IMG/VR virus record: IMGVR_UViG_3300019458_000020
Span: 186,814 to 250,813 of that record
Length of the DNA stretch: 64,000 nucleotides
Reading direction: 5' to 3' (one strand)
The position numbers were made by a program, and so were the translations under genes. Under the pieces are notes generated by a model, which made no database searches, was not told where the DNA came from, and worked only from the letters and a program-made list of their open reading frames with translations. This document shows, piece after piece, positions 27,476-46,190 of this stretch; the first letter of the stretch is position 1, and every line of letters begins with the position of its first letter.

Positions 27476-27710
27476 ATATGATTATCGACATAATAAATAC
27501 CCTTTCTGTCAATAAGTCGAACTTGACATAGAATTCGTTCTTGACTTTTCTTGGTGAATTTGTTATAGTATTGGAGTGGATGAGGCCGACCGAAAGGCGC
27601 CAAGAGTAGGGTACCTGGGAGACGATAAAAACTTTAACGATACCGTAAATACTTTCAAAAAATCTCCGTAATTTGTTTGACAAATAGGTTGAACTGGGTT
27701 AATATTCCCC

Positions 27711-28037
27711 ATGAAGAAAAAAGACATCAAAGCGTTGTTCAAAATGAAACTTGGAACGGATGCTAATTGGGCCGTCAAAGGAATGTTGAAGATTTACGAA
27801 TTCCAAACCACATCGGAAAAGGCCGTTCAAACCACAACGGACCACAATGACGTTGGTTTTTCTGGTTGTGATGCTGAAATTCTCAGTTCTTTCAGCGAAC
27901 AGGTTTTGAAGGGCCGTAATCTGAGTGAAAAACAAATGGCCATTGTGTTCAAGAAAATGCCGAAGTATTGGCAACAGCTTGTCAAACTGTCGGATATGGC
28001 GAAAGTTGAAGCTGCCGGTGCTAAGATGGCGGCATGA
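27711..28037 (+). CDS. hypothetical protein
   Basis: Own promoter; HNDVGFSGCDAEILSSF..LSEKQ. Confidence 0.8.
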   Translation: MKKKDIKALFKMKLGTDANWAVKGMLKIYEFQTTSEKAVQTTTDHNDVGFSGCDAEILSSFSEQVLKGRNLSEKQMAIVFKKMPKYWQQLVKLSDMAKVEAAGAKMAA

Positions 28038-28303
28038 ATCGGTTCACTTACAAAAATAACGGGGGAAAGTCATTGGATGGCTTCCCCTATGTCATTGAGT
28101 CTGATAACATTCTGAAGTCAGACACAATATTTAAGGAGAAAAGTGGATTCGATGTTGTAAAGTGTCCCTGGATAGGATGTTCCATAGAATTTAACATCTC
28201 AAATGATTATTTGACAAAATTGCTGAGTGTGATATTTTATATCCGAATTTACCAATCGGTAGCCGATGATATACGGAACCTGTTGGTGGCAAAGAAAAAG
28301 TAA
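28034..28303 (+). CDS. hypothetical protein
   Basis: ATGA overlap. Confidence 0.55.
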   Translation: MNRFTYKNNGGKSLDGFPYVIESDNILKSDTIFKEKSGFDVVKCPWIGCSIEFNISNDYLTKLLSVIFYIRIYQSVADDIRNLLVAKKK

Positions 28304-28541
28304 ACATCAAAAATAAAAAACATGAACACAAAACAAGCACTCCGTTGGCTCCACCGCAACTGCGGCCTCAAGTTGAATGGCACGTATCATGTCACCCGTA
28401 TGGGTGAAACCGTCAGTAATCGTAATTGGAACACGTTCCGCAAGGAATTTCTGGCACTGGTTGCTCGTGTGGGCTAAATCCCACAAAAAGGACAAGTATG
28501 TCCCTTGACATCTCCTTTTTTTCAAGTAAACTCTCGTCAAC

Positions 28542-28733
28542 ATGAAACTTATTGATTCTGTAAGTCCCGGTGACAGAGTAACAATCATCACCCGTCATGG
28601 TTCAAAGTTGTCAGGTAGGGCAGTGATGCCATCTTCTCATGGTGGCTGGGTTTTGAATGGAGGCGGACGACATGGGACACCAATGTTGGCCGATGACACA
28701 AACACCATCAAAGTAAGCAAGAAAAGAAAGTAA
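28542..28733 (+). CDS. hypothetical protein
   Basis: Own promoter. Confidence 0.7.
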   Translation: MKLIDSVSPGDRVTIITRHGSKLSGRAVMPSSHGGWVLNGGGRHGTPMLADDTNTIKVSKKRK

Positions 28734-28734
28734 T

Positions 28735-29082
28735 ATGACACTCAAAGACAAGCCAGTTCCGTTCAAAGAAATCAACCTAAAGGATTTGGAAGGCGAATGG
28801 GTAGGATCTTACCGGGGCCACTTCGAACAAGTCATTAAGTTCCACATTCAGCCGGATGGGTGGCTGATAGCCACCAAGATTACGGGAGATGAACACGTTC
28901 CGGGTGGGGAAATTACTTTCAAAGCAGATTTGAATCGCAATGGCATGGGCGTAGGCCAAGTTGCTGAAAAAGAATTTCGCAATAACACTTGGGTAATCGG
29001 TCAACTCATTGTTGAAGACAAGGAACATGTCATTTTTACATGGGCCGGATGTGGTTCGGTTAGATTCCGAAAAGATGGCTGA
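28735..29082 (+). CDS. DUF3506 (Cyclin_D1_bind/EXECUTER C-terminal)-like domain protein
   Basis: GEWVGSYRGHFEQVI..LIATKITGDEHVPGGEITFKA resembles the family's ATKITGDPNVPAG motif (recall only). Confidence 0.55.
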   Translation: MTLKDKPVPFKEINLKDLEGEWVGSYRGHFEQVIKFHIQPDGWLIATKITGDEHVPGGEITFKADLNRNGMGVGQVAEKEFRNNTWVIGQLIVEDKEHVIFTWAGCGSVRFRKDG

Positions 29083-29126
29083 TTTCCCTTGACATAAACA
29101 AAAAAACTGATTACTTTCACCAAAAT

Positions 29127-29357
29127 ATGAATTTAACTCCTACAATCAATCTGTATATCTCGCCTCGGGATATTGAAGCCATTTCCTCGGGCCAACCGGT
29201 CCAAGCTCGTAATAGCCGAATGGATAATATGGGCAATGACATTGCCCATTTGGTTCAGGTTTCGTTTCCAATCACGGCATACGAAATCATTCCGAGCGTC
29301 CAGAACCTCGGTCTGTTCACCGTCACTCGTATTCGTGAATCCGGCCAATTTTCTTAA
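29127..29357 (+). CDS. hypothetical protein
   Basis: Own promoter. Confidence 0.6.
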   Translation: MNLTPTINLYISPRDIEAISSGQPVQARNSRMDNMGNDIAHLVQVSFPITAYEIIPSVQNLGLFTVTRIRESGQFS

Positions 29358-29361
29358 TAAA

Positions 29362-29943
29362 ATGATTATCGTTGGCGACATTCACGGCCGATACAGAAAG
29401 CTTAATGATATCGCCCGTAAGCACAAAGACCAAACCATTGTCCAGATTGGTGACTTTGGTTTCGGCTTTGGAGAAATGTTTGATCTTGACGGAAGCTTAA
29501 TCGAAAAAAACATTCGATTCTTTCGTGGTAATCATGACAATCCAGAACTGTGTAACAAGCATCCTCAATCACTCGGCGACTATGGAGTGTTTGAAGGAAT
29601 GTTCTTTGTTGCAGGAGCAGATTCAATCGACAAGGATTTGAGAATTGAAGGATTGACATGGTGGCGTAATGAAGAATTGACGATGCAGCAATTCAATGAC
29701 GCCATCGACCAGTATAGTCATGTGAAACCAGAAATCGTTTTATCACATGATTGCCCACAACAAATTTGTACAGACTTCTTCGGTATTCCCGAATCAAGTA
29801 GAACGCGGCAGGGATTACAAGCCATGTTGGAGATCCATCGTCCCAGAGTTTGGATTTTTGGACATCATCATCGGCATTTTGCAAAAAATGTAGATGGATG
29901 TACATTCCGTTGTCTTCCAGAACTACAAGCATATCAATTATGA
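29362..29943 (+). CDS. calcineurin-like metallophosphoesterase
   Basis: GDIHG, GDFG, GNHD, SHDCP, GHHH motifs; true ATG at 29362. Confidence 0.92.
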   Translation: MIIVGDIHGRYRKLNDIARKHKDQTIVQIGDFGFGFGEMFDLDGSLIEKNIRFFRGNHDNPELCNKHPQSLGDYGVFEGMFFVAGADSIDKDLRIEGLTWWRNEELTMQQFNDAIDQYSHVKPEIVLSHDCPQQICTDFFGIPESSRTRQGLQAMLEIHRPRVWIFGHHHRHFAKNVDGCTFRCLPELQAYQL

Positions 29944-30209
29944 TTAAAATCCACATTCATCTAACAATCAGGGAAGGGCACATTCGAGGCGATGAAATTC
30001 GCAAGGATGGAACCAAGGGCAAAAATGTTTACTACTACATTGAAGATGGATTCCCGACTGTCTTGGCGGGATTCTCGGCTGCTGTGGATAGAATCATGTT
30101 TGATGAAGCGGAATGTGAAATCACATTCACAACAGACCAATCATATCAGAATGAGCTTAATACTGTCTTGGATGCAGTCAGAAGCGGAAAGGTTTTGATT
30201 ACACTATGA
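29940..30209 (+). CDS. hypothetical protein
   Basis: ATGA overlap. Confidence 0.6.
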   Translation: MIKIHIHLTIREGHIRGDEIRKDGTKGKNVYYYIEDGFPTVLAGFSAAVDRIMFDEAECEITFTTDQSYQNELNTVLDAVRSGKVLITL

Positions 30210-30389
30210 TAAGACTGATACAATTCGTCTCGGCCGTTACAGGCTGCATATTCATTGGCGTAGCCATGAACAGCTGGTTAATTGGTATTGGCATCGGATT
30301 GGTTTGGCTCACACTGCCGCCTTTCAATCCTGACCAAGACTAAGATTATCACTTGACAATTCTTTTAAGTATTGTATTCTATCGTCACC

Positions 30390-30926
30390 ATGACGATACC
30401 GAACGACATTGTTAAGAGAGTGGAAGACAAGATTCTTGACACTCTTTTACTTCTTCAAAAGCGATACCCGAACGCCAATTTGGAAATCCCGAAGTGGCAA
30501 TGGACAAAGATGGGAAGAACAGCCGGACGTGCTCACTACGGCCTTGGTTTGGTTGAATTGAATCCCGACTTCATCACTAATCATTTGGAAGAACTTATCA
30601 ATCAAACCCTTCCACACGAAATTGCCCACCTAGCATCATTCAAAATCTACGGCATTCTTGGAAAAGGACACGGCAGATTTTGGAAATCTGTGATGTATGC
30701 TCTTGCCCCTCTTGGTGTTCAAGTGAAACGGTGCCATGATTACAGTTTGGATGGTGTAACTACTCGGGTTCGCCCTCGGCCTTACGAATACGTCTGTGGT
30801 TGTAAAGATAAGACTATCAAGGTAACATCTAACATTCACAACAAGATCCAACGTGGCCAAAAACGTTTCTGTATTCGTTGTAAAGTCACCATTAAGTTAA
30901 AGTCTCTTGTTCAACAGGCCGCTTAA
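30390..30926 (+). CDS. sprT: SprT-like zinc metalloprotease
   Basis: TAGRA..LNP..TLPHEIAHL..HG..WKSVM..YVCGC..CIRC. Confidence 0.9.
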   Translation: MTIPNDIVKRVEDKILDTLLLLQKRYPNANLEIPKWQWTKMGRTAGRAHYGLGLVELNPDFITNHLEELINQTLPHEIAHLASFKIYGILGKGHGRFWKSVMYALAPLGVQVKRCHDYSLDGVTTRVRPRPYEYVCGCKDKTIKVTSNIHNKIQRGQKRFCIRCKVTIKLKSLVQQAA

Positions 30927-30978
30927 ATTTTCGCAGTAGGCATCTTGACAACCAAAACAAAAACAGTATAATATCACC

Positions 30979-31215
30979 ATGAAATACAATAATAACACTA
31001 CGGCCACAGCTACCGGTAACAGTTCCAAACGAAAGATTGGTGGTTACAACAGCTCGATTCTTCGGGCCAAACGTAATCAGAAGCGACATGAAGCCGAGGC
31101 ACGAAACCAAGCGTGGTCCGATTTGACTCCAAAGCAACAACTGGCCAGTCTCGCCGGCCGCAGGGGTGAATCCAAACGTCAAGTGGCACGCATTCAAGCA
31201 GCCAACAAGAGTTAA
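30979..31215 (+). CDS. hypothetical basic protein
   Basis: ATG 6 nt after TATAAT; terminator-like hairpin near 31250. Confidence 0.75.
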   Translation: MKYNNNTTATATGNSSKRKIGGYNSSILRAKRNQKRHEAEARNQAWSDLTPKQQLASLAGRRGESKRQVARIQAANKS

Positions 31216-31466
31216 GTTTTCCGGCATGGATGGATACGATGGATAAAGGAGAACCCGGTTCTTCCCCACGTTCAAAGGCCACCAAACAAAGTCAAGTGTC
31301 GAAAGATGCTTGACTTTTTTATTTTATGTCGTAAGTTCACGTCAACAGGTGTCAAACCGAGGATAGGGGACCGGAGGATCTCAAAATCACTTTAACGTTA
31401 ATCCCTAACCACAACAATTCTATAAAAAAGATTTGACAGACTGATTTACTTTGATATATTCCTACC

Positions 31467-32099
31467 ATGAATAAAAAGTCAACTACAGTTACAATTCAAG
31501 ACAGAAACGAAATGGTTGGATTCATCCGTTCACTCGGGACTGAATGCCGGTTTGTTTCTATGGTGACGGAAACTCCTGTGAAGATGCGCAAGACTGGCAA
31601 TCCTTTTGCCTCCGGCGTTATCAAGGTGAGCCGCCGAAACGGTCTGATTAACGTCAACTATGTCGCTGCCGTTGAACGGAATCTGAAAGAAGCGAATGGT
31701 GGCACGCCGGTTGAATACACTGCCGGCGAAACGTGGTATGTTCATGCTACCACCGATGACGGCCGGGCGATTCCCTTGTGTGTTCACAAAAAGGATTCAA
31801 AGAAACACTATCTCCAATACTTTCCTCACCGCACCCTTGGCCGCAACGAATACTTTTTCAATGGTCAGAAAATGACCACTGAACAAGTCGCCACCATGAA
31901 GAAATTTGTTCAGGAAGACAATCGGGCTGAGTTTAAGCCTACCGTGATTACCCTTGGAATCGACTCCATTCGGGTTCTGAAAGCTCGTCGAGTGGAGATG
32001 AAGAATAAGCTCGTCAGCCGCATCACAAGTCGTCTGGCGCAGTTTAAGAACATTCTGGCGAACATTGACGGACCAACGAAACCGGCAGTTGTCGCTTGA
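31467..32099 (+). CDS. hypothetical protein
   Basis: ATG 6 nt after the -10 box. Confidence 0.8.
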   Translation: MNKKSTTVTIQDRNEMVGFIRSLGTECRFVSMVTETPVKMRKTGNPFASGVIKVSRRNGLINVNYVAAVERNLKEANGGTPVEYTAGETWYVHATTDDGRAIPLCVHKKDSKKHYLQYFPHRTLGRNEYFFNGQKMTTEQVATMKKFVQEDNRAEFKPTVITLGIDSIRVLKARRVEMKNKLVSRITSRLAQFKNILANIDGPTKPAVVA

Positions 32100-32132
32100 C
32101 AATAACCACAACATCCAGTAAAGTAAAAAACT

Positions 32133-32501
32133 ATGAAATACATGAAAAACATTGTACCTATTAATATGGGTGCCCGTGTCGAAGTTAGATTTGAATTTGA
32201 CCGAATTCTGTCCACCCGGCGGCTCTTCGCCAGTTGGGTCGGCGACCGTACGTTTAGTACGTTAAGTAACATTCCGGACAACGTGGCTGAACTTTTGACC
32301 GCCGTGGCCACTGTTCCTGGCGTCAATAACCATCGTGACGGGCAGACTCACGTCAGCGGCAACGAGCTTTCCGTTGAAGTGATTGCTATTGCCAATCGTC
32401 CCGTTCGGGAAATCGTCAAGACCATTCTGAAACGTGTTCAACGCCGGGTGGCAAAGGGTGAACGTCTTCAAATGGTTCGGCTACTACCTCGCAGCAAGTA
32501 A
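32133..32501 (+). CDS. hypothetical protein
   Basis: Own promoter; terminator at about 32543-32578. Confidence 0.7.
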   Translation: MKYMKNIVPINMGARVEVRFEFDRILSTRRLFASWVGDRTFSTLSNIPDNVAELLTAVATVPGVNNHRDGQTHVSGNELSVEVIAIANRPVREIVKTILKRVQRRVAKGERLQMVRLLPRSK

Positions 32502-32542
32502 ACTTTTCCTTCCAATTGGAAACGAAATGGGGATACCGTCCC

Positions 32543-32578
32543 AGCCCGTTGGAGAAATCCAACGGGTTTTTGTTTTTT
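32543..32578 (+). terminator. intrinsic terminator
   Basis: cccgttgga-gaaa-tccaacggg followed by a T-run. Confidence 0.8.
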
Positions 32579-32728
32579 CCATTTGACTTTTTTTAATTAA
32601 ATGTTAAACTTAATTAACAGCCGACGAGGCGAGGGTAGGGGACCAGTGGATCGACAAAAATTTTAACGTTAAAGTAAATAGTTAAAAAACTCTTTGACAA
32701 CTGATTTCTTTATGTTATTCTTTATGGC

Positions 32729-32887
32729 ATGAATGAATTTGAAGCTAACTTAGCCGCTGAGTCTGCCGCCGAATGGGCCGCAGAGGAAGCAATGGAAAGG
32801 GAAATGCTTGAACAGGGTGATTGTTGTTTGGACAACGAGCCGCCTGATTATCCCGACGGTTTCGATGATGGATACGGTGGCGAATAA
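32729..32887 (+). CDS. 52-aa very acidic protein (below the ORF-track cutoff)
   Basis: MNEFEANLAAESAAEWAAEEAMEREMLEQGDCCLDNEPPDYPDGFDDGYGGE; own promoter. Confidence 0.65.
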   Translation: MNEFEANLAAESAAEWAAEEAMEREMLEQGDCCLDNEPPDYPDGFDDGYGGE

Positions 32888-32935
32888 CTTCAAAAAACTC
32901 TTGACAATCAAACCCTAATACATTAAGGTTGTCGC

Positions 32936-33787
32936 ATGAATAAACTTATCTTTGGAAAAGGTAATGCCAAACTGGCCGAAAACATTCTAACCTTTTCCCT
33001 TCCGTCTGGTTATAGTTGTCCGGGTGCAAAGGATTGCCTTTCAAAGGCCAATAGAGAAACCGGAAAGATTACAGACGGTGCCGGTTGTCAATTCCGTTGT
33101 TTCTCAGCGAGTCAGGAGTGCATTTTCCGTAACGTTCGGGAATCCCGATGGAACAATTTTGAACTGCTTCGGAACGCAAAAACGGTGAACGGCATGAAAG
33201 CTATTATTCTTGAATCACTTCCGAAAACTCCCTTTCAGGTTGTCGTTCGGATTCATGTCGCTGGTGATTTTTTCAGCCAGACATACTTTGACGCATGGTT
33301 GGCAGTCGCTAAGGAAAACCCTAACTTTCTCCTTTACGCTTACACTAAATCCCTTCCCTACTGGGTGGCTCGTTTGAATGATATCCCTTCTAACTTCATT
33401 CTAACTTCTTCTTTTGGTGGTAAGTATGACGATATGATAACGCAACACAATTTGCGTTACGCAAAGGTTGTTTACTCTGAGGAGCAGGCACAAGCCTTGA
33501 ATCTGGAAATTGACCATGACGATAGCCACGCCTATAAGAATGGACCTTCTTTCGCTCTGTTACTTCATGGAACACAACCTAAAGGAACAGAGGCAAACGT
33601 TGCTCTTCGGGTGTTACGGAAGGCAGGCAAAGGTGGTTATTATTCTCCCTATAACATCGGAAAGAACAAAGCCAAAAAGGGATATGGCCGTCTGGCCAAG
33701 TCAAAAAAGAAAACCGCTGGGGGGAGTACCCCCGAAGCCGGCTCCATAGGGGGGAAGAGTGTTTCTGCTGAACAAATTGCTGCTTGA
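32936..33787 (+). CDS. phage Gp88-like protein
   Basis: TFSLPSGYSCPG..VRIHVAGDFFSQTY..YAYTKSL. Confidence 0.75.
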   Translation: MNKLIFGKGNAKLAENILTFSLPSGYSCPGAKDCLSKANRETGKITDGAGCQFRCFSASQECIFRNVRESRWNNFELLRNAKTVNGMKAIILESLPKTPFQVVVRIHVAGDFFSQTYFDAWLAVAKENPNFLLYAYTKSLPYWVARLNDIPSNFILTSSFGGKYDDMITQHNLRYAKVVYSEEQAQALNLEIDHDDSHAYKNGPSFALLLHGTQPKGTEANVALRVLRKAGKGGYYSPYNIGKNKAKKGYGRLAKSKKKTAGGSTPEAGSIGGKSVSAEQIAA

Positions 33788-33790
33788 TTT

Positions 33791-34009
33791 ATGAAATGGA
33801 CACGAAAGAAACCAACGAAACCCGGCCGCTACTGGTTCCGTGGCTGGGGCAAAACAAAGGTGGTTGTCATAGCCCATCATACCGATGCGGAGATTGACGC
33901 CTGGCGAGTTTGTGCCGTCGAATTCAATGAATACGGAACAGCGTTGAGCCTCTTTCCGGAAAATGAATGTGAGTGGTCCGACCGGGCCATTCCTGAACCA
34001 ACGGAGTAA
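33791..34009 (+). CDS. hypothetical protein (KPxKPGxxW family, paralog at 43329)
   Basis: KKPTKPGRYWF vs KPDKPGIWEWF. Confidence 0.65.
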   Translation: MKWTRKKPTKPGRYWFRGWGKTKVVVIAHHTDAEIDAWRVCAVEFNEYGTALSLFPENECEWSDRAIPEPTE

Positions 34010-34102
34010 CGCTGGGGGGTACCCCCCGAATAATCCATCCATACGGTAGGGATAGGACTTGACAGTAGAATCAATGTCTGTTACATTGTAAGTTGAAAAA
34101 TT

Positions 34103-34813: not shown

Positions 34814-34933
34814 TTTCGGTGTAGGTTCATGTTTCTCTAGCCCCTCCTGAGTGGGACGGGTGGTACTAAATTAATAGGGTGGGGGGTACCCTCCCCATAG
34901 GGGGCATTTAAAATAAAGGGAAAAGGAGAAATT

Positions 34934-35010
34934 TGGTAGTCCTAGTGGGAATCGAACCCGACATCTATAGGTTGAAAGCCTATTATCCTAAGCCATTGGA
35001 CGACAGGACC
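34934..35010 (-). tRNA. tRNA-Glu(UUC)
   Basis: ATAGG-CTTTCAA-CCTAT, GGTTCGATTCC, ACCA. Confidence 0.93.
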
Positions 35011-35021
35011 ATAAAAATTGT

Positions 35022-35096
35022 TGGAGCGGGTTGCAGGCAACGCTCACTGCACCTGACACTGGAAAGTGCCCATGATTCTCCTTTCACCAAACCCGC
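35022..35096 (-). tRNA. tRNA-Gly(UCC)-like, atypical
   Basis: GCGGGTT/AACCCGC, U73, CCA; anticodon loop appears 6 nt (TTTCCA); non-canonical T arm. Confidence 0.65.
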
Positions 35097-35139
35097 ACAC
35101 ATAACTATAGGACGGATCTATGAAAGTGTCAAAATAATT

Positions 35140-35226
35140 AAAACAGGCGGAAACTCTTTAGCGGGGTTTCTCTTATCCGTTTCCGTTAGGCGCCCACAGG
35201 CGCACAGTTATGACACTGCCTGTTTT
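35140..35226 (-). ncRNA. candidate structured RNA
   Basis: 9-bp closing stem AAAACAGGC/GCCTGTTTT with inner GGCGC and GAAAC/GTTTC stems. Confidence 0.45.
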
Positions 35227-35237
35227 GAAAAACCGAA

Positions 35238-38809: not shown

Positions 38810-38859
38810 ATAGATTACAAAATGCTCAATCTCAATTTATTTTAACAATTTGAGCTTTC

Positions 38860-40284
38860 TTATATACTTCTGCCCATCAGGAATCTGAAAAACTTCATTC
38901 CTTCAACCATGTCACCATCATTTAAAATACTCAGGTTGGTGATTTTAGAATTAAGACGATGACAAATTTGCTCTTCACGGGTTCCAGCAGCGAAGAGAAT
39001 TCGTTGGTAACACTTTGTTAATCCACCTTGACGATGAATTCTGCCGAGAACTTGAAGTAATTGGATAGCGGAGTAATTTGGATTGATGATTGTAGCACGG
39101 GGATGTTTACCGGTTAAATCATGAAGATTAATCGATTGCCCACCAGCAGCATTGTTAGCAATGATGATTCTTTTCCTGTCTGCATTGAAATCGGCAACGT
39201 CCTGAATTCTATCATTCACACTCTGCCCACCATAAATCAATCCAATCTTATCACGAAACTTTTTCTTGGAAGACAGACGGCGATTAATCAATTCAATGGT
39301 ATTTGTGAAGTTTACAAACACGCCAACAGACTTTCCTTCATCAAACAAGTCTTCAATCATTTCCAAAATTGTAGGCACCTTGAGCAATTCAATTTCACGA
39401 CGAGCTTTGATGATTACTGCCAAGATATGTTCGGCATACTTGGCTGTTTGTTCTTGAAGTCGAGCAATCTCATTTTCCATCCAGTCATATCTGGCTTGAA
39501 TCTTATCGGCGTTATCCATAGCGTATGCCTTGACAACGATTTGATTCTCTGGAAACAACGTACCCATTCCTTCACGGGTCAAACGAGACGATATCTTTTG
39601 AGTATCAAACAGATTTGTGTGACACAACTTCATTTTGGCTTGTGCCTCTTTATCATCATTATCGAAATACTGTGCTCCCCATTTACCTACCCATTGAGCA
39701 CCGTAATCAATACAAAAGTCATTGAAATCCGAAAGCTTATGGAGATTGACAGTATAACCAAACGCCTTCATCTCAAGAGGATTTGTGGCTTGAGTGGCAG
39801 ACAACAGAAGACAACGATATCCTTGACGTTTCAAGGCAATCATCAATCCTGCATTAAGACTTGATGGACCTTTACACTTATGAGATTCATCCAAGATAAC
39901 CAAACATCCTGGCGGCAGCTTCAATTCAGCAGTAAGAAACCTTTCCACCTTGTGCGTTTTCTTTGTGGAACGTATCAACACATCGTCGGCCTTTGGCTTC
40001 TTATACTTCAAATATTTGGTATTACCACGACAAAGCTTTTCGTAATTGATGATAATGGTTGGCTTCAATCCATACAAAGCCAATGTAGCAACCCAGTCAG
40101 GCATTACCATCTTCGGGCAAATAACAACGATTGGACAATTCATTCCCCTTGCGATACAAGAGGCGACGTGAGTTTTTCCACAACCTGTTTCCGACAAGTC
40201 AGCAGCCACACCATTAAGGTAAAGGCTGTCAATGAGAGTCATTGCATGGGCCTTTTGAGGGTCAAGAAGTCCGGTAAGATTCAT
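38860..40284 (-). CDS. superfamily II (SNF2/DEAD-like) helicase
   Basis: SETGCGKT, ILDESH, SAT, QVLGRIHR. Confidence 0.92.
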   Translation of the reverse strand: MNLTGLLDPQKAHAMTLIDSLYLNGVAADLSETGCGKTHVASCIARGMNCPIVVICPKMVMPDWVATLALYGLKPTIIINYEKLCRGNTKYLKYKKPKADDVLIRSTKKTHKVERFLTAELKLPPGCLVILDESHKCKGPSSLNAGLMIALKRQGYRCLLLSATQATNPLEMKAFGYTVNLHKLSDFNDFCIDYGAQWVGKWGAQYFDNDDKEAQAKMKLCHTNLFDTQKISSRLTREGMGTLFPENQIVVKAYAMDNADKIQARYDWMENEIARLQEQTAKYAEHILAVIIKARREIELLKVPTILEMIEDLFDEGKSVGVFVNFTNTIELINRRLSSKKKFRDKIGLIYGGQSVNDRIQDVADFNADRKRIIIANNAAGGQSINLHDLTGKHPRATIINPNYSAIQLLQVLGRIHRQGGLTKCYQRILFAAGTREEQICHRLNSKITNLSILNDGDMVEGMKFFRFLMGRSI

Positions 40285-40323
40285 GTTCGGAGATTATACT
40301 ATCAATTAAGAGAATGTCAAGCG

Positions 40324-40578
40324 TTAGTCATTGAAGACCACACACTCCACGAAAACACCTTGAACCGAAGTAACATATACCCACATTTGAAGTTCATTGT
40401 CTTCATCATCCGAACGAATTTCGAGGCCTTTGCCTGGCGGAAATTGACGATTCCACGGGTCAAGAAAACCATTCGCCATCAAGTCAGAATCCTCAGCAAC
40501 GTATCGGCCAGTTGTCTCTGTAAAGGACCAGAGTTTATTCTTAATGGGATACTTCTTATTGATTTCAGTTGGTTTCAT
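40324..40578 (-). CDS. hypothetical protein
   Basis: ORF in operon. Confidence 0.65.
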   Translation of the reverse strand: MKPTEINKKYPIKNKLWSFTETTGRYVAEDSDLMANGFLDPWNRQFPPGKGLEIRSDDEDNELQMWVYVTSVQGVFVECVVFND

Positions 40579-40763
40579 TTTGAATCGGTGACTTCAACCG
40601 TTTCGATGGTTAAATCTTGAATGTCTGCCTTGTCTTTCAATTTTTTATCCAAACAATTCATATCCAACCGAACATTGTCCATGTATTCATCTAGATTCAA
40701 ATCAGAATCGGCGGACAGAATCACGTTCACCGTCAGGGTAGCATAGATTTTTCTCATAATCAA
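40575..40763 (-). CDS. hypothetical protein
   Basis: ATGA overlap; own promoter. Confidence 0.65.
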   Translation of the reverse strand: MIMRKIYATLTVNVILSADSDLNLDEYMDNVRLDMNCLDKKLKDKADIQDLTIETVEVTDSK

Positions 40764-40795
40764 AATATATCACTTATTATCCATTTGGCAAAAAG

Positions 40796-40825
40796 AAAAG
40801 GGGAGGTTTTTAGCCTCCCCTTTTT
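40796..40825. terminator. bidirectional intrinsic terminator
   Basis: aaaaggggagg-tttttag-cctcccctttt. Confidence 0.8.
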
Positions 40826-40846
40826 GCTTCCCAAGCCTGATTTCAA

Positions 40847-41278
40847 TTAGGCAGTCGCTTCAACAGCAATGCCTTCGGGAGCGGTGACGATGACAGCCGG
40901 GGCGGGTGTCGGCTCAGCGGCGATAATCTCACCAGCGGGCAACGTCACAGCGGGCCTGACGGTAGCCGGAGCCAGAACAGCGGCCTTCTTGGCCGGCTTC
41001 GTGGTACGCTTGGCCTTGACCGGAGCGTTGGTCTTCAGCATGTAACGGAACGACGGGCGACCGACTTCTTTGGTCTTCAGGTCTTCCGAAAGACGGATGA
41101 GCGTCTTGGAAGCCACACCGGCCTCAATCTTGTTGCGAACGGTCAACTCACACACGTGCGGGTTGAGACTCACGACAGCGGCGATGGTGAAGGCGCCACG
41201 GGGGAACTTGATGACTTTGGCGGGAGCGCCAGGACCACGCTTGATTTCGGACTTCGTATTACGATTCTTGTTCTTCAT
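40847..41278 (-). CDS. basic winged-helix-like protein with Ala/Pro-rich tail
   Basis: AFTIAAVV..ELTVRNKI..GRPSFRY; visibly GC-rich codon usage. Confidence 0.75.
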   Translation of the reverse strand: MKNKNRNTKSEIKRGPGAPAKVIKFPRGAFTIAAVVSLNPHVCELTVRNKIEAGVASKTLIRLSEDLKTKEVGRPSFRYMLKTNAPVKAKRTTKPAKKAAVLAPATVRPAVTLPAGEIIAAEPTPAPAVIVTAPEGIAVEATA

Positions 41279-41577
41279 ATCAGTTTTCTTTCTACTAACG
41301 TTCTTTTTTTTGTTTGTTAATTCATTGATTCAACTATTGAATCAACTTTCGATATACCATCATAATTCATTTCTATAAGAAGTCAAACAGAATTTTCAAA
41401 ATTTTCTACTTTTCTTTTCTGAAAGAATCTTTCGTACAAATAACGTTTTCGACTTGACTTTTATAAAAAGTATGTTATAGTATTCACGTTGATGAGGTCG
41501 TCCCGAGGAACGCCGGGGGCACCAAGAGTAGGGGACCAGGGGATCGTTATAAACTTTAACGTTAACCTATTTAATAC

Positions 41578-41606
41578 AAAAAATCGCCAACCTTTCGATT
41601 GGCGAT
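41578..41606. terminator. intrinsic terminator
   Basis: aaaaaatcgccaa-cctttcga-ttggcgatt. Confidence 0.7.
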
Positions 41607-41625
41607 TGGAATGACAGCCTCCGAA

Positions 41626-41988
41626 TCAATCCCACCAGATTCTATAAACAGGAATGTTTTGTCCACCGAAGTCAATCGTTCTCAAATGACATTCATTCGC
41701 TTTGAGTGTATCCTTTAGAACACACGTATCCACTGTGATTGGAGAAATAACATACACACAAACCGATCCTTCCCTTGCCAAGATAACCTTGGAACCATTC
41801 GGCAACCGATTGAGAAGTTCTGGCCGAAATGCGTTATATCTGACAACAGTTCGTTCCAAAATCTCAACAGCTACCGACACCGAACAATATTCATTGGCAC
41901 GAAAGTTAAGATTCCGTTCATGCTTAGTTCCATTACAATCGGAGTAAGCATTCCGAACATCACGAAGCAAAGTTTGATTTAATTTCAT
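41626..41988 (-). CDS. hypothetical protein
   Basis: ATG 6 nt after TAAACT. Confidence 0.75.
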   Translation of the reverse strand: MKLNQTLLRDVRNAYSDCNGTKHERNLNFRANEYCSVSVAVEILERTVVRYNAFRPELLNRLPNGSKVILAREGSVCVYVISPITVDTCVLKDTLKANECHLRTIDFGGQNIPVYRIWWD

Positions 41989-42018
41989 GGTGAGAGTTTA
42001 CTGTTTTTTATACAAATG

Positions 42019-42396
42019 TCAAGCAGGTTTCTTAAAGAAAGCTGCAGTTCGATCTTCAAACTCAGCCATTCTCTGTGCAACTTGTGTGGGAACCATTAAC
42101 TTGTTTCCCTCTTGGAAAACACCAGGAAATGAATATCCATCCATGTAATCGATGAAAGCAACTTCCGTAAATCGCTTGTTGACTTTCAGAACGATATAAT
42201 GGGCATAACCATCACAAACATTCCACTTCAGATGTTTTCCTGGCTTCAAACCCTTTCCAGCAATCTTCTGAAGGGTTTCAACCAATTGCCAAAGTTGTTC
42301 GTCGTATTCACGCCATTTACCATCGTGGAGATTGTCACGAGCAACACCAGCAAGACGATTGATTTCTGTAATTGTATCAGTAATGAGATTTTTCAT
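42019..42396 (-). CDS. hypothetical protein
   Basis: Own promoter. Confidence 0.75.
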   Translation of the reverse strand: MKNLITDTITEINRLAGVARDNLHDGKWREYDEQLWQLVETLQKIAGKGLKPGKHLKWNVCDGYAHYIVLKVNKRFTEVAFIDYMDGYSFPGVFQEGNKLMVPTQVAQRMAEFEDRTAAFFKKPA

Positions 42397-42578
42397 AGAA
42401 AGGAGTTTACTATATTAAGGGTCAATGGCAAGTCAGACTTTCCATTTTCTATAACATTTTGTGCATTCGCAACGCCCACGTAAGATTGCTCTTCCAAAGA
42501 TATTCCAATGACCACCATCACGAGAGAAATGATGTCCACGATGGAACAAAGTGCATTTGATTGTTTGCCAAATCTTTT

Positions 42579-42890
42579 TCATGCAATCGGCTTCGGGTCA
42601 CCACCAAAACAATCGTCAATCCAAGAATTGGCTTCTTCCCTCGGCGTTACTCCGTTATGGTCTGCCATCTCGTAAATGAATCCACGGTCATCCTGAGCAA
42701 AAAGATACTTTACCATATCCTTACGAGTCATCTTCTTTTTCGTAAAAATATATGTAGAGTCGTCACTTCCTTCCGTTGCTGGATTCACATAAACAAAGAT
42801 ACCAGCAGACCGAAGAATCGGTGCAATCTCTTCAATTACCGAATCGGCAGATTCTTTCCAATCAAAGTTAAGTTCAATGGGGAATTTCAT
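42579..42890 (-). CDS. hypothetical protein
   Basis: ATGA overlap. Confidence 0.7.
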   Translation of the reverse strand: MKFPIELNFDWKESADSVIEEIAPILRSAGIFVYVNPATEGSDDSTYIFTKKKMTRKDMVKYLFAQDDRGFIYEMADHNGVTPREEANSWIDDCFGGDPKPIA

Positions 42891-43279
42891 AGGTCATCAA
42901 GTGTGTGTTGTGGAGGAATCGTCACGTTATATTTTTCTTTCACGAATGACCGAACCACTTCACAATAACGTTGAACGTCTTTTTCAAGGTCCATCGTCAA
43001 GTCACTCATAAGAAACGGAATCAATTCACCACCAACATAATCGCCAGCCTCGTTTGTCAATTGAACAGGAATTGAATCTTCACATTCCCAAAATGGAGTT
43101 GCCCAAATGTAATCGAAATGGCCCTCTTTGGATTCTCCGACGGCGTTCCAACAAAGGCAACCGGTCATATCTTCCACCCAACAATGTTTGCTTTCCATGA
43201 AAGCAATTCGATGAATGAGAACATTGATGTAATCGTAAACCAAATCTTTGTAGTCAACAGCGTTTTCAGTAACGTTCAT
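42887..43279 (-). CDS. hypothetical protein
   Basis: ATG 6 nt after TAAACT. Confidence 0.75.
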   Translation of the reverse strand: MNVTENAVDYKDLVYDYINVLIHRIAFMESKHCWVEDMTGCLCWNAVGESKEGHFDYIWATPFWECEDSIPVQLTNEAGDYVGGELIPFLMSDLTMDLEKDVQRYCEVVRSFVKEKYNVTIPPQHTLDDL

Positions 43280-43328
43280 GGTGTGAGTTTACCGTTTTTT
43301 ATAAAATTGTCAAGTGAATTTTATCGTT

Positions 43329-43592
43329 TCAAGGAAACAAGTAAAGTTCAGAATCAGGCACGGAACCTGTTGGACCTACGTAGTTTCCCCAACGGTCAGG
43401 CCACTCGGATTTATTAAATTCTGCTTCATCCGTTCCAACCATTTCATCATTGACATTGTAGTAACCACCAAACCAGAAGACTCTGAGATATGGGGGATAC
43501 GATGCATCTGGTTCAACATTAACCACTACGACCAATCTTTTGTGGCCTGTTTCGTCGAACCATTCCCAAATGCCTGGCTTGTCGGGCTTCAT
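43329..43592 (-). CDS. hypothetical protein (paralog of 33791)
   Basis: KPDKPGIWEWF N-terminus. Confidence 0.65.
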   Translation of the reverse strand: MKPDKPGIWEWFDETGHKRLVVVVNVEPDASYPPYLRVFWFGGYYNVNDEMVGTDEAEFNKSEWPDRWGNYVGPTGSVPDSELYLFP

Positions 43593-43636
43593 TTGTCAAG
43601 AAAAGCGTTTATATGATTTATTTATGCGCAATGGCA

Positions 43637-43951
43637 TTACTTTATCAAACCCAAGGCCCTCTTCTCTTCAGCCGTCAACTTCTTGAGAGCTTGAGTTCGG
43701 AGTTCAGCACGTTCGTTAATCTTTCGACGTTCATCACGTTCCTTGTGTTCTTTCCACCACGGTTGAAGGCCGGAAATCTGGTCGATGTTCAAAGGAACAA
43801 TAACATTATTTTTCTCCAGAACCGTCATTACTTCACAAAGCAAATGAGTCACCAAATCCAATTCCTTTTTATATGGTTGAGTCAGTTTCTTGTTTGCAGC
43901 TTTCTTTGCAGCTGCAATTTCTTCAGGAGATTCGTAGTATTGACATGGCAT
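43637..43951 (-). CDS. hypothetical protein
   Basis: MPCQYYESP..THLLCEVM..WWKEHKERD. Confidence 0.7.
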   Translation of the reverse strand: MPCQYYESPEEIAAAKKAANKKLTQPYKKELDLVTHLLCEVMTVLEKNNVIVPLNIDQISGLQPWWKEHKERDERRKINERAELRTQALKKLTAEEKRALGLIK

Positions 43952-43988
43952 AGATTTTATTTGTTAAATCAGTTGTGTGGATTATACT

Positions 43989-44626
43989 TCAACTTTTTAT
44001 ATTTGTCAAACGAATAAGCGCTGCTTTCCTCTTATTATTCCAGCAACCCATACAAAGAATCGTAACACCGTCAGAATCAAGAAAAGACATGTTCCCGATG
44101 CAATCCCAGTTATGAATAAGAGAATTGCAAACGTCACAACTCTCAACAAGGCCGCTGCCATTTGGAGCCACCTGCATGTCTTCTTCGAGAATCTTTGCAT
44201 TGAATGCGTTCACTCCATAATATTACGAATAATATTAAGAATGTCAAACAGAATCATCCGACAAACCCTCATTTCCACTCTTTTCTTTCCGTGGTCAATC
44301 GATGCCAGAGCTTCATCCTCCGTCTCATATCTCATGGAATAGATTGTGCCTGTATTCAGATTCAAAACTCGCCATTCCTTCAGCCTGCCACAATAAACGG
44401 CTGTTTCGTATATCATTCTGTTCTTAGGCATAATTCACATTTGTTCCCGTGGAGTCAACCCAACACGTTGCCGACTGCGATGATCCACGATTTTCATACC
44501 AGAAAAACCGGCGTCAACAATTTCATTGGTCAATAATCCATGACCAACCTTGTTGTTAGCAAACCGGTTTCCACGCCAAGAGAAGTGGTTTTTGTATCTG
44601 TGAACAATGGTCTGTTTCTTATTCAT
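43989..44626 (-). CDS. three short hypothetical ORFs (43989-44213, 44210-44431, 44435-44626)
   Basis: Abutting ORFs with promoter-proximal starts. Confidence 0.55.
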
Positions 44627-44762
44627 GGCCTCAACCCTATCATTGAAATATATAAAGTCAAATAGTGCGACACTTTTTTATACTTCTTACTTGACAACAT
44701 CAAACGAAAGTGTTATCGTGTTGCACACCGAAGATCCCCAAATTCCTGAATCCTATTGGCGT

Positions 44763-45308
44763 TTATGGAATACTGTGGCAGGCGATGAATGTATCACTCG
44801 GCATCCATTGCCGATGTTCCATGCTTAGGACATTCTTAAATCCTCGTATAACAATGGGATTGTGAACGGCAGCAATGATTTGGCATCCATTCTTCTCTGC
44901 CTTCCGAAAACAATCAACCAGAAAATGACATGACCGAATTGACAGTGCCATATCAGGCTCGTCCATGATAATCGTTTCATGCTTCCACGTCTGAATTTCA
45001 TCAATAATCTTCTTAACCATTTGACCATGAGACATCATTATACAAGCCAGTTGCGTCATTGTCTCAATTTTATGGCCAAGCCGAGGATTATCCTTCTCAA
45101 AGTCAAACTCTCGAATGGCGTTGTTTCCATCGGTATCAAACTTGACAACATTCTTTCCCGCTGCGTGTCTTCCCATTATTAACTTCAACAGACTGCTTTT
45201 ACCTGTTCCTTGTTCTCCAACCAGAAGATTGACGCCAACATTAAAGTCAAAGGTTTCCCCTGCCTTCAATACTCGAAAGTCTTTCAGTATTTCCATTCGT
45301 TTCAACAT
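44763..45308 (-). CDS. ABC/AAA-type ATPase
   Basis: GEQGTGKS Walker A; SHGQ signature; IIMDEPDMALS Walker B; VHNP. Confidence 0.85.
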   Translation of the reverse strand: MLKRMEILKDFRVLKAGETFDFNVGVNLLVGEQGTGKSSLLKLIMGRHAAGKNVVKFDTDGNNAIREFDFEKDNPRLGHKIETMTQLACIMMSHGQMVKKIIDEIQTWKHETIIMDEPDMALSIRSCHFLVDCFRKAEKNGCQIIAAVHNPIVIRGFKNVLSMEHRQWMPSDTFIACHSIP

Positions 45309-45359
45309 ATACGTGCGTCAACAATACTCCATAAAAATTCTTTGTCAAGTCGCTTGACA

Positions 45360-46190
45360 TTTATATAAAAAATGGTAATTTCTTTCACAATTTAAGAACG
45401 GATTCAAAAAGTGGCGGCGACACTAAAAGCCAGACTAACGGTAAAACGTGAAGGGTAGGGGACCGGCAGATCGATGCAGCTTGGCACTGTATTGGCGTAT
45501 ATGGCGTTTCCTATTATTATTAGGTATTTCCCCTATCTCTTACAGGCGTCTTACATAACTTGTTGAAACACAACGCCATTTCTATAACTTATTATCAAGG
45601 GTTTATACAATATTTATAATTATCACGAAATCAACGCTTTAGGCGTCTTTATCGTTAACTTTATCAATAACATCAAGATCCTCTTCAAGTTGCTCAGGAC
45701 CCTCCACTTTTCCAGACATACCTACTCCCCGTGCAAGTAGCCAAGCAATTACATTGAGTAAAACGACAATAATAGCACCTAAGACTTTTAAGGACATATA
45801 TTAATTTATTGATCAATTACTCCAGGGTACTTTTCCCTGGGTACTTTTTTCTTTTTAGTACTTTTAAGCAATTAGCAGCAACAGCGTTCTGGGGAGGTAC
45901 ATAGGAGGGGAGCAATTCCAAAGCGCCAAAATATTTTCATATAAATAATTCTGATACGGAGATACGTATTTACATTATTAAGTAAAATTTTTACCGTGCC
46001 AGGAATTTCTGAAAGTAAAGAACGCACGGAGAGTCAGCATTTTTACTTAATACTTTTTATACAATTAGCTCTGTAGGGGACAAAATGGGGTGAAGTGGGT
46101 CATTGTGGTGCTTATGGGTCAGTCTTCAAAAGTTGGGGGGTACCCCCGCGTTGAAACCCTCTCTGTATATAGGGTGAGGGCTTTATTCCG
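45360..46190. other. ~830-bp non-coding region with repeats (possible origin or terminus)
   Basis: Repeated (A)TAACTT, GGCGTCTT and GTACTTT; GC-rich palindromes. Confidence 0.4.

What the first reader, a model, noticed from the sequence alone, without database searches (positions are those of the whole stretch)
27560..45480. Five promoter-driven, ORF-less units with a variable 5' part and a conserved 3' motif
Seen, all on the plus strand: a TTGAC(T/A) promoter, then ~20-70 variable GC-rich nt, then RGRTAGGG(G/T)ACC-N5/6-GA(T)C, then AACTTTAACGTTA in four of five (27603, 31361, 32631, 41524, 45451). The 41454-41606 copy has its own promoter and terminator, opposite to all neighbouring genes, so it looks like a stand-alone ~120-nt transcript. 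The 27570 and 41480 copies also share GATGAGGYCGWCC..CCAAGAGTAGG. Inference: a paralogous small-RNA family with a constant handle and a variable, possibly guide or antisense, segment; alternatively a repeated operator.
Basis: partly seen in the sequence, partly recalled or inferred. Interest (0 to 1): 0.7.

Follow-up and report, generated by a model that had tools for sequence, protein, structure and literature searches.

The report
Promoter-driven conserved leader RNA module, phage
Five short non-coding units in the early-gene region of a large uncultured phage each pair their own promoter with a small hairpin and a conserved ~45-base tract; the unit recurs at the same spots in related phages, matches no described RNA family, and most likely marks regulatory transcripts rather than guide RNAs.

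Summary
The 9-mer TAGGGKACC occurs exactly five times in the 250.8-kb phage record, always on the + strand, within 18 kb. Each copy lies 20-70 nt downstream of a sigma-70-type promoter (P1). I found 12 more copies in five related uncultured-phage contigs, 17 in all, and every one has a P1.

The "variable 5' part" is not a guide. It is a short GC hairpin with an A-rich loop that abuts the conserved block RAGRGURGGGKAYC-NGNGG-A-run-CUUUAACGWUA. The stem changes by compensatory substitutions between orthologues (six events). It shows no excess complementarity to the phage genome.

In 11 of 17 copies the block is followed by a second promoter (P2) whose -10 sits 5-7 nt before an ATG, a leaderless gene start. 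The tail-to-P2 distance steps in about 10.5-bp units. The other six copies head transcripts that run antisense into convergent genes or into each other.

There is no match in Rfam, cultured phages, 185,579 bacterial and archaeal genomes or the literature. No RNA-seq run was listed.

Best reading (about 0.3): a 5' RNA module on dedicated regulatory transcripts. Rivals are a trans-acting small-RNA or decoy family, a DNA operator, and a PeSL-like recombination cassette. Function is untested.

The parts
27541..27569 (+). c1 promoter P1 (TTGACT-17-TATAGT, TG-extended -10)
27584..27642 (+). c1 module: hairpin GGCCGACC-GAAA-GGCGCC (27584-27601), then block AAGAGTAGGGTACCTGGGAGAC-GATAAAAA-CTTTAACGATA (27602-27642). 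This is the c1/c4 subtype, preceded by GATGAG.
   Evidence: The subtype is conserved in L047b and L062b, with a G-C to A-U compensatory change in the outer stem.
27677..27713 (+). c1 P2 (TTGACA-17-TAATAT) with ATG 5 nt after the -10. This is a leaderless-type start of a 108-aa gene (phrog_21015).
31310..31337 (+). c2 promoter P1 (TTGACT-16-TAAGTT). A terminator-like hairpin at 31288-31317 overlaps its -35.
31348..31400 (+). c2 module: hairpin GGT-GTCAA-ACC, then block GAGGATAGGGGACCGGAGGATC..CTTTAACGTTA (one extra base before the tail).
31433..31469 (+). c2 P2 (TTGACA-16-TATATT) with ATG 6 nt after the -10 (210-aa gene).
32583..32610 (+). c3 promoter P1 (TTGACT-16-TAAACT), directly after the strong + strand terminator 32543-32568.
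32620..32687 (+). c3 module: hairpin GCC-GACGA-GGC, then block GAGGGTAGGGGACCAGTGGATC..TTTTAACGTTA. The tail arm TTTTAAC (32661-32667) can pair with GTTAAAA (32681-32687).
   Evidence: There are two compensatory pairs in hairpin 1 and one in the tail hairpin among three orthologues.
32694..32731 (+). c3 P2 (TTGACA-16-TATTCT) with ATG 7 nt after the -10.
41454..41481 (+). c4 promoter P1 (TTGACT-16-TATAGT), back to back with a minus-strand promoter at 41386.
41496..41564 (+). c4 module: long hairpin GGTCGTCCC..GGGGGCACC (41496-41523), then block AAGAGTAGGGGACCAGGGGATC..CTTTAACGTTA (41524-41564). No P2 follows.
   Evidence: There are two compensatory pairs against the G001 orthologue.
41582..41607 (.). 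Terminator hairpin of the convergent gene 41626-41988(-), T-run on the minus strand. It is the first structure the c4 transcript meets.
   Evidence: In G001 the stem sequence differs but the hairpin is kept.
45354..45381 (+). c5 promoter P1 (TTGACA-16-TAATTT).
45388..45473 (+). c5 module: about 50 nt of conserved 5' sequence, hairpin ACG-GTAAAA-CGT (45438-45449), then core GAAGGGTAGGGGACCGGCAGATCG. No CTTTAACG tail.
   Evidence: The orthologue stem is CCG/CGG against ACG/CGT, a compensatory change.
45639..45797 (-). 52-aa membrane-type ORF lying antisense to the c5 transcript.
   Evidence: It is conserved in G001 with mostly third-position-like changes.
45821..45851 (+). + strand intrinsic terminator. 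It could end a c5 transcript of about 460 nt.
   Evidence: There is a compensatory A/T swap in G001.

Best explanation
The five units are non-coding, transcribed regulatory cassettes of a large uncultured myovirus. A dedicated sigma-70-type early promoter (P1) starts an RNA whose first 3-10 nt are followed by a small, sequence-variable hairpin. Directly after the hairpin comes a conserved, mostly single-stranded tract: RAGRGURGGGKAYC, a G-rich NGNGG, an A-run, then CUUUAACGWUA.

I propose that this 5' module is read as RNA, on the nascent transcript, by a protein or by the transcription complex. It would decide whether the P1 transcript goes on into what lies downstream. In 11 of 17 copies that is a second promoter (P2) driving a leaderless gene, which P1 read-through would occlude and which could not be translated from the long leadered RNA. 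In 6 of 17 copies it is a convergent gene or a convergent sister unit, giving antisense transcription or polymerase collision. The cassette would thus impose timed control on a handful of early genes.

Shown: the anatomy, the conservation, the constant co-orientation with P1, the hairpin covariation, the leaderless P2 architecture and the modular gain and loss. Inferred: that the units are transcribed, that recognition is at RNA level, and the interference or attenuation mechanism.
For: 1. All 17 copies in 6 contigs have a TTGACN-16..18-TAnnnT promoter ending 20-69 nt upstream on the same strand. The chance per copy is about 0.03.
2. Copies sit at the same genomic positions in three phages whose flanking proteins are only 61-79% identical. 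The c3 region is 86% identical over 168 columns, against about 70-77% nucleotide identity in coding DNA.
3. The hairpin abuts the block in 16 of 16 tested copies, with a Watson-Crick 3-bp closing stem, against 30% in cross-pairing controls. On the model-fitted alignment, 92.9% of cells are paired, against 8-40% when the partners are slid.
4. Compensatory double changes between orthologues: c3 has 2, c4 has 2, c5 has 1 and c1 has 1.
5. The block and tail are asymmetric and always oriented with transcription.
6. Coding is excluded. There is a 1-nt indel inside the block in c2, and GATGAGG is read in different frames in c1 and c4.
7. In 11 of 17 copies a P2 follows with the start codon 5-7 nt after its -10. 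This is the rule in the region: 39 of 71 promoter-like sites.
8. c4 and c5 transcripts would run into convergent genes. c5 has a + strand terminator 370 nt on. L047b and L047c are convergent and share one tail.
9. The P1-plus-module is a separable add-on. The same P2 exists without it in the window at about 18791, and c1 is replaced in G001.
Against: No transcript data exist, and no RNA run was listed. Minimum-free-energy folds of the units are no more stable than shuffles (z from -0.01 to +0.99), so apart from the small hairpin the RNA is not strongly structured. There is no terminator-like signal inside the module that would make attenuation obvious. The tail-to-P2 distance is quantised with a best period of 10.5 bp (R = 0.72, naive p about 0.003), which is what a DNA-level, face-of-the-helix interaction with P2 would give. 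No candidate factor was found: there is no NusG, sigma-70 region 2 or T7-type RNA polymerase in the 250 kb held. Orthologues are not independent, so the effective sample is about 7-9 lineages.
Confidence: 0.3

Rival explanations
1. A family of trans-acting small RNAs of about 70-130 nt made from strong early promoters. The 5' hairpin protects the end, and the conserved single-stranded tract is a seed or a protein- or ribosome-binding decoy site, for example SD-like GGAGG/AGGGG tracts or an anti-defence decoy.
For: Each unit has a dedicated promoter and no ORF. In this genome the other promoters not followed by an ATG include ones that precede the tmRNA and several tRNA genes. c4 and its orthologue have a hairpin 20 nt after the tail. 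The conserved part is single-stranded, and there are several paralogues per genome. The unit is gained and lost independently of P2.
Against: In 11 of 17 copies nothing terminator-like separates the unit from P2 and the gene. The c4 hairpin is oriented for the other strand. No complementary target exists in the phage genome beyond chance: the best non-self duplex is -30.6 kcal/mol, against shuffled-query minima of -26.7 to -39.2. Positional conservation with the same downstream gene in three phages and the phasing with P2 suggest a cis role. The host is unknown, so host targets could not be searched.
Confidence: 0.25
2. A DNA-level regulatory site. The 45-bp block, especially the tail CTTTAACG(T)TA(AAG), binds a phage or host transcription factor, or forms phased A-tract curvature. 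It would act on P2 as an upstream activator or UP-like element, or block elongation from P1.
For: The tail-to-P2 -35 distances fall in classes 15-18, 25-28 and 35-39 bp, with a best period of 10.5 bp. The tail is a perfect 14-bp palindrome in one copy, and a GTTAAA(R) half-site recurs 13 bp downstream in several copies. Conservation runs without a break from the block into P2.
Against: The right half of the palindrome is not conserved (c1, L047a, L046). Six copies have no P2 at all. A P1 accompanies every copy and the block always has the same orientation to it (17 of 17). The variable hairpin with compensatory changes has no role in a double-stranded operator. The one compensatory change between the tail and its downstream partner fits pairing rather than half-site recognition.
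Confidence: 0.17
3. PeSL-like cassettes: repeated promoter and stem-loop patches in a hyperplastic region whose main consequence is homologous recombination and gene shuffling. The conserved block would have no RNA function of its own.
For: The region is packed with sigma-70-like promoters (80 found against 43.7 expected), small ORFan genes and terminators. c2 and c3 have a terminator hairpin just upstream of P1. Presence or absence differs between sister phages, with the homology break within about 5 nt of the end of the tail. PeSLs are described in PMC2839356 and PMC4122927.
Against: Paralogues share only the ~45-nt block, not the promoter spacer or hairpin sequence. That is short and asymmetric for a recombination patch. 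The block is kept at 80-90% identity in phages that otherwise share no nucleotide similarity (L047), and the hairpin covaries. Both point to selection on the element itself.
Confidence: 0.1
4. R-loop or primer-forming origins. A promoter-driven G-rich RNA forms a stable hybrid ahead of an AT-rich unwinding region, as at T4 ori(uvsY) and ori(34).
For: The arrangement is a promoter, a G-rich non-template tract and then an AT-rich tail.
Against: There are five sites in one orientation within 18 kb. G-richness is not kept in all copies: L062c has GGTAGATACTACGAGACGG. The hairpin and the specific tail sequence would be unexplained. No replication data exist.
Confidence: 0.04
5. CRISPR-like or guide RNAs (constant handle plus variable guide), or solitary-repeat anti-CRISPR RNAs.
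For: There is a constant part and a variable part, each unit has its own promoter, and there are several copies.
Against: The variable part is an 11-28 nt self-complementary hairpin, not a spacer. It has no excess complementarity to the phage genome. The block was not found in 185,579 bacterial and archaeal genomes: the single hit was a chance match. No cas-like or TnpB/IscB-like gene was seen among the neighbours scanned.
Confidence: 0.03

Closest known systems
PeSL (promoter-early stem-loop) cassettes of T4-type phages (PMC2839356, PMC4122927)
   Same: Both are repeated composite regulatory cassettes in a hyperplastic early region of a large myovirus. Both have sigma-70-like promoters with AT-rich upstream DNA and stem-loops, associate with small ORFan genes, and show cassette-bounded insertions and deletions between sister phages.
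   Different: In PeSLs the order is terminator stem-loop, then promoter. Here the order is promoter, small non-terminator hairpin, a conserved 45-nt transcribed block, then often a second promoter. That block is not part of the PeSL definition.
Lambdoid nut sites (boxA + boxB) and HK022 put RNAs
   Same: All are promoter-proximal, orientation-dependent RNA elements at the start of early transcripts. The small GC hairpin with a GNRA-like purine-rich loop (GAAA, GACAA, GACGA) looks like boxB. The string CUUUAAC in the tail also occurs in rrn-type boxA. Both resemblances are from memory.
   Different: The order is hairpin then conserved tract, the reverse of lambda nut. The boxA likeness is only 7 nt, which is chance level. 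The loops are not conserved. No N-like or Nus-like phage gene was identified. Genes here are mostly monocistronic and leaderless, so processive antitermination has no obvious use.
Tandem-promoter transcriptional interference and convergent antisense control (for example type I toxin-antitoxin loci)
   Same: An upstream or convergent promoter gives an untranslated transcript that crosses another promoter or a small hydrophobic-protein gene. c5 overlaps the 52-aa membrane ORF in this way.
   Different: Those systems need no conserved 5' module. Toxicity of the 52-aa protein is untested.
5' stabiliser elements (5'-terminal hairpins; STAB-SD of Bacillus cryIIIA)
   Same: There is a hairpin within a few nt of the predicted 5' end, and an SD-like G-rich tract about 100 nt upstream of the start codon with no start codon nearby.
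   Different: The SD-like NGNGG is the least conserved part of the block. The best-conserved parts (GURGGGKAYC and CUUUAACG) are not SD-like.

Membership tests
Any Rfam family (release 15) | Match to a covariance model at the gathering score, or a weak match at E up to 5-10 | tested here: not met
   The only hits in the window are tRNAs and a tmRNA. Nothing overlaps the units at E<=5 over 27000-46000, or at E<=10 on c4 and c5 alone.
PeSL cassette | Strong sigma-70-like early promoter with an AT-rich upstream region, in a hyperplastic ORFan-rich region | tested here: met
PeSL cassette | Adjacent stable stem-loop acting as a terminator, upstream of the promoter | tested here: inconclusive
   c2 and c3 have terminator-like hairpins just before P1. 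c1, c4 and c5 do not. The conserved hairpin of the module lies downstream of P1 and is mostly 3-4 bp, so it is not terminator-grade.
PeSL cassette | Cassette-bounded insertion, deletion or replacement between close relatives | tested here: met
   c1 is replaced in G001, with homology resuming just after the tail. The module in L046 is absent upstream of the orthologous P2 in the window.
Lambda-type nut site | boxA consensus (about 12 nt) upstream of boxB | tested here: not met
   Only CUUUAAC (7 nt) resembles boxA, and it lies downstream of the hairpin. The consensus was recalled from memory.
Lambda-type nut site | boxB hairpin with a conserved GNRA-like pentaloop bound by an N protein | tested here: inconclusive
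   The loops are purine- and A-rich but vary from 4 to 10 nt. An N-like protein cannot be recognised by sequence.
Lambda-type nut site | Terminators downstream that are read through in a factor-dependent way | not testable with these tools
   Terminators exist downstream of c2, c4 and c5. Read-through needs experiments.
CRISPR repeat, solitary repeat (Racr) or guide RNA | The constant part matches a CRISPR repeat of a host, and the variable part matches a target | tested here: not met
   No true match in 185,579 genomes. The variable parts show no excess complementarity. The host itself is unknown.
rRNA mimic (5S loop E, 23S sarcin-ricin loop, 16S helix 45) | Similarity to rRNA above chance, or a match to the 5S model | tested here: not met
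   Local alignment of six cores to the E. coli rrnH operon scores 18-21, against 19.0-19.6 +/- 2.2 for shuffled cores (p 0.2-0.84). There is no 5S model hit at E<=10.
Hammerhead ribozyme (suggested by GAUGAG..GAAA in c1) | CUGAUGA..GAAA core with three helices | tested here: not met
   No Rfam hammerhead hit. GAAA is the hairpin loop, and the c2 and c3 types lack GAUGAG.
Type I toxin-antitoxin (c5 only) | Small hydrophobic protein gene overlapped by an antisense RNA with its own promoter and terminator | tested here: inconclusive
   The anatomy fits. Toxicity and the RNA itself are untested.

The most novel reading that the evidence does not exclude
The module is a new kind of promoter-proximal RNA signal. 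It would be used by a phage that expresses most early genes as leaderless mRNAs. The nascent 5' hairpin plus conserved tract would recruit a phage or host factor that switches dedicated non-coding transcripts between stopping and reading through. This would silence or release leaderless promoters and convergent genes. Alternatively, the RNAs could act as abundant decoys that tilt the cell towards leaderless translation or away from a defence.
Probability: 0.2. Interest if true: 0.8.

Novelty: new variant of a known kind. Interest (0 to 1): 0.55.

Why it matters
Large uncultured phages carry long stretches of small early genes whose regulation is unknown. Here one conserved, undescribed non-coding module is attached to its own promoter at fixed genomic positions in several related phages. 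It sits in a region where most genes appear to be expressed as leaderless mRNAs from individual promoters. If the module is an RNA-level switch or decoy, it would be a new regulatory device for early phage gene control. It would also be a compact, portable part: promoter, module, then a leaderless promoter. Even if it proves to be only a recombination or operator cassette, it marks the units by which these genomes gain and lose genes, and it is displaced by HNH endonuclease genes at two sites.

Tried and rejected
- **Rfam:** gathering scores and permissive E-values gave nothing on the units.
- **5S rRNA model:** no hit on the whole record.
- **rRNA look-alikes:** 5S loop E GAGAGUAGGG, sarcin-ricin GGACCGGAG and 16S helix 45 GUAGGGGAACC were recalled from memory. 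Tested against the real E. coli rrnH operon, they score no better than shuffled cores.
- **Small-peptide reading:** rejected, because frames are inconsistent and indels fall inside the block.
- **Guide or antisense reading of the variable parts:** rejected.
- **Trans target of the conserved core in the phage genome:** none beyond chance.
- **Thermodynamic stability:** the units do not fold better than shuffles.
- **Cultured phages:** only chance-level hits.
- **Bacterial and archaeal genomes:** one chance hit. Metagenome hit L049 and viral hit L061 are also chance.
- **RNA-seq:** the DNA runs come from a cave metagenome, and no RNA run was listed.
- **Phage-encoded NusG, sigma-70 region 2 and T7-type RNA polymerase:** none in the 250 kb held.
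- **TAG, TGA or TAA recoding:** no sign in ORF-length statistics despite a CTA-anticodon tRNA.
- **Literature:** full-text search for the motif strings returned nothing relevant.
- **MAFFT alignments of the hairpin:** not structure-aware. A 4-sequence covariance model aligned the hairpin in only about half the copies.
- **First viral-contig scan:** it used a spacing that was wrong by one base and found nothing. It was corrected.

Full report
**What the window is.**
- The window is the last 64 kb of a 250,813-bp IMG/VR virus record. The same DNA appears to sit on a 340,880-bp contig from a cave metagenome.
- The genome encodes a tail sheath, a portal and a major head protein, so it is a large myovirus. 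GC content is 37.5%.
- The only protein near the finding with named relatives (a GP88-family protein, 32936-33787) is closest to freshwater Synechococcus phages, at about 44% identity. The host is unknown.
- The window is a hyperplastic, early-type region of small genes on both strands. It also holds nine tRNA genes and a tmRNA. It carries 80 sigma-70-like promoter matches between 27000 and 46500, against 43.7 expected.

**The observation.**
- The exact 9-mer TAGGGKACC occurs five times in the whole record, always on the + strand, between window 27607 and 45464. The 10-mer with one mismatch gives 7 hits against 2.07 expected.
- Each copy has a TTGAC(T/A)-16/17-TAnnnT promoter, usually with a TG-extended -10, ending 20-68 nt upstream.
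- The conserved block is about 45 nt: RAGRGTRGGGKAYC, NGNGG(ATC), 3-6 nt, an A-run, then CTTTAACG(T/A)TA. c5 lacks the tail.
- c1 and c4 share a further 5' string, GATGAGGYCG..CCAAGAGTAGG.

**Relatives.**
- Pattern scans, a profile HMM and a covariance model found 12 more copies:
  - four in IMGVR_UViG_3300025536_000038 (G001), which is syntenic with window 24237-46098 at 70-77% nucleotide identity in coding DNA;
  - one in Ga0207952_1002077 (L046);
  - three in Ga0315295_10002296 (L047);
  - three in IMGVR_UViG_3300031772_000204 (G002);
  - one in IMGVR_UViG_3300002138_000087 (G003).
- G001 and G002 carry copies at the same positions as c2, c3, c4 and c5, and as c1, c2 and c3, in front of the orthologous genes. 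Those proteins are 61-79% identical.
- The c3 intergenic region is 86% identical over 168 columns among three phages, which is higher than the coding DNA.
- L047 shares almost no other nucleotide similarity with the window, yet keeps the block at 82-92% identity.
- No copy exists in 50,697 cultured-phage records or in 185,579 bacterial and archaeal genomes.

**The "variable part" is a hairpin.**
- In every copy, the bases just before the block are the 3' arm of a short GC-rich stem. The stem sequence differs between copies: GGC/GCC, GAC/GUC, GGU/ACC, AGC/GCU, GCC/GGC, ACG/CGU, CCG/CGG. The loop is purine- and A-rich: GAAA, GACGA, GACAA, GUCAA, GUAAAA, AUGAAA.
- A Watson-Crick 3-bp closing stem is present in 16 of 16 copies, against 30% when each upstream region is paired with another copy's arm.
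- On a model-fitted alignment, 92.9% of cells pair, against 8-40% when the partners are slid.
- Orthologues show six compensatory double substitutions and none that break the outer stem:
  - c3: GCC/GGC against GGU/ACC, two events;
  - c4: G-C to A-U and U-A to C-G;
  - c5: A-U to C-G;
  - c1: G-C to A-U.
- The predicted transcription start lies 3-10 nt before the hairpin, so the hairpin would be 5'-terminal.
- The rest of the unit is not strongly structured, because folds are no better than shuffles.
- In the c3-position orthologues the tail CUUUAAC can pair with GUUAAAG 13 nt downstream, with one compensatory change. This second hairpin is not general.

**What follows the block.**
- In 11 of 17 copies the tail is followed, 15-39 bp later, by a second promoter (P2). 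P2 reads TTGACA (TTGACT in L063)-16/17-TAnnnT, and its -10 lies 5-7 nt before a start codon.
- That is the general habit of this region. Of 71 promoter-like sites in the window, 39 have a start codon 3-10 nt after the -10, and across the whole record the commonest offset is an ATG at exactly 6 nt (19 sites), opening an ORF of at least 25 codons. Most early genes therefore look leaderless.
- A transcript starting at P1 would carry the same ATG internally with no Shine-Dalgarno sequence, so P1 RNA is probably not a messenger for that gene.
- The tail-to-P2 distances fall into three classes: 15 and 18; 25, 27, 27 and 28; and 35, 36, 37, 37 and 39. The best period in a 5-20 bp scan is 10.5 bp (R = 0.72, naive p about 0.003). 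The true significance is weaker because orthologues are related.
- The other six copies have no P2:
  - c4 and its orthologue run into the terminator hairpin and body of a convergent gene.
  - c5 and its orthologue run antisense through a conserved 52-aa membrane-type ORF to a + strand terminator.
  - L047b and L047c are convergent units that share one tail.

**Modularity.**
- The P1-plus-module can be present or absent in front of the same P2. L046 has it, but the window at about 18791 has an HNH endonuclease gene there instead.
- c1 is replaced in G001 by small ORFs and an HNH gene, and homology resumes within about 5 nt of the end of the tail.
- This resembles the cassette-bounded shuffling described for PeSL elements of T4-type phages (PMC2839356, PMC4122927).

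**Interpretation.**
- Several features argue that the element is read in a transcription-coupled, strand-specific way, most simply as RNA:
  - a dedicated promoter accompanies every copy, always in the same orientation;
  - the block and tail are asymmetric;
  - the 5'-terminal hairpin covaries;
  - coding is excluded.
- It is not a guide. The variable part is self-complementary, and neither it nor the core has targets in the phage genome.
- One reading covers both architectures: P1 makes a non-coding regulatory transcript, and the module governs that transcript's stability or elongation. Read-through would occlude a leaderless P2 or oppose a convergent gene.
- I give this reading about 0.3. 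A trans-acting small RNA or decoy gets about 0.25, and a DNA operator or phased upstream element of P2 gets about 0.17. The phasing result is the main support for the operator reading.
- PeSL-like recombination patches, R-loop origins and CRISPR-like guides are less likely.
- Resemblances to boxA and boxB, the T7 epsilon enhancer, STAB-SD and rRNA motifs were leads from memory. Those that could be tested were at chance level.

**Limits.**
- No RNA data were available.
- The host is unknown.
- The 17 copies represent perhaps 7-9 independent lineages.
- The remaining 90 kb of the parent contig could not be searched.

Noticed in passing
window, whole (examples: 30945-30981, 31433-31469, 40320-40282 minus strand, 42022-41986 minus strand): Leaderless-type gene starts dominate. 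39 of 71 TTGAC[ATG]-16..18-TAnnnT sites have a start codon 3-10 nt after the -10, opening an ORF of at least 25 codons. Across the whole record the commonest offset is an ATG at exactly 6 nt (19 sites), often within nCCATGAA. This is unusual for a phage; phiKZ, for example, showed no leaderless transcripts (PMC8244752).
   Followed up: partly
window 8136-8211 (-) and 10429-10836 (-): There is a tRNA with anticodon CTA (amber-suppressor type, labelled Pyl by ARAGORN) and a phage tmRNA with the tag peptide AKLTRLQNVDFSFNMNNVEIEFNAVAA. Each has its own sigma-70-like promoter. ORF-length statistics give no sign that TAG is recoded.
   Followed up: partly
whole record G000: GATC is about five-fold under-represented (186 observed, 919 expected) and GTAC about three-fold (207 against 570). 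Even so, 4 of the 5 cores keep a GATC.
   Followed up: partly
window 18010-18762 (-); L005:3486-3920: Free-standing HNH endonuclease genes occupy, in one phage, exactly the intergenic sites where the sister phage carries the P1-plus-module. These are the site upstream of the P2 at window 18791, and the c1 site in G001.
   Followed up: partly
window 45800-46100: This stretch is about 90% identical to G001, above the level of coding DNA, and holds no conserved ORF. It includes a + strand terminator with a compensatory stem change and a near-copy of the core (GTAGGGGACA at 46073). It may be another non-coding RNA.
   Followed up: no
window 45639-45797 (-): A conserved 52-aa ORF with an N-terminal hydrophobic helix is fully overlapped by the predicted c5 antisense transcript. 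The anatomy resembles a type I toxin-antitoxin locus.
   Followed up: no
G000:C1:21834-25133 and 106420-109539 (outside the window): The ribonucleotide reductase and portal genes carry HNH endonuclease-like insertions, which look like inteins or homing elements.
   Followed up: no
L047:10401-10539: Two module copies face each other from convergent promoters. They share a single tail segment, read as CCGTTAACGATAAAGG on one strand and CCTTTATCGTTAACGG on the other.
   Followed up: partly
window 35104-35132, 36070-36097 (-) and other promoters without a following ATG (for example 14215, 36606, 44009 on the minus strand): Several strong promoters are not followed by a start codon. Some precede tRNA genes. 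Others precede sequence of unknown nature and might head further non-coding RNAs.
   Followed up: no
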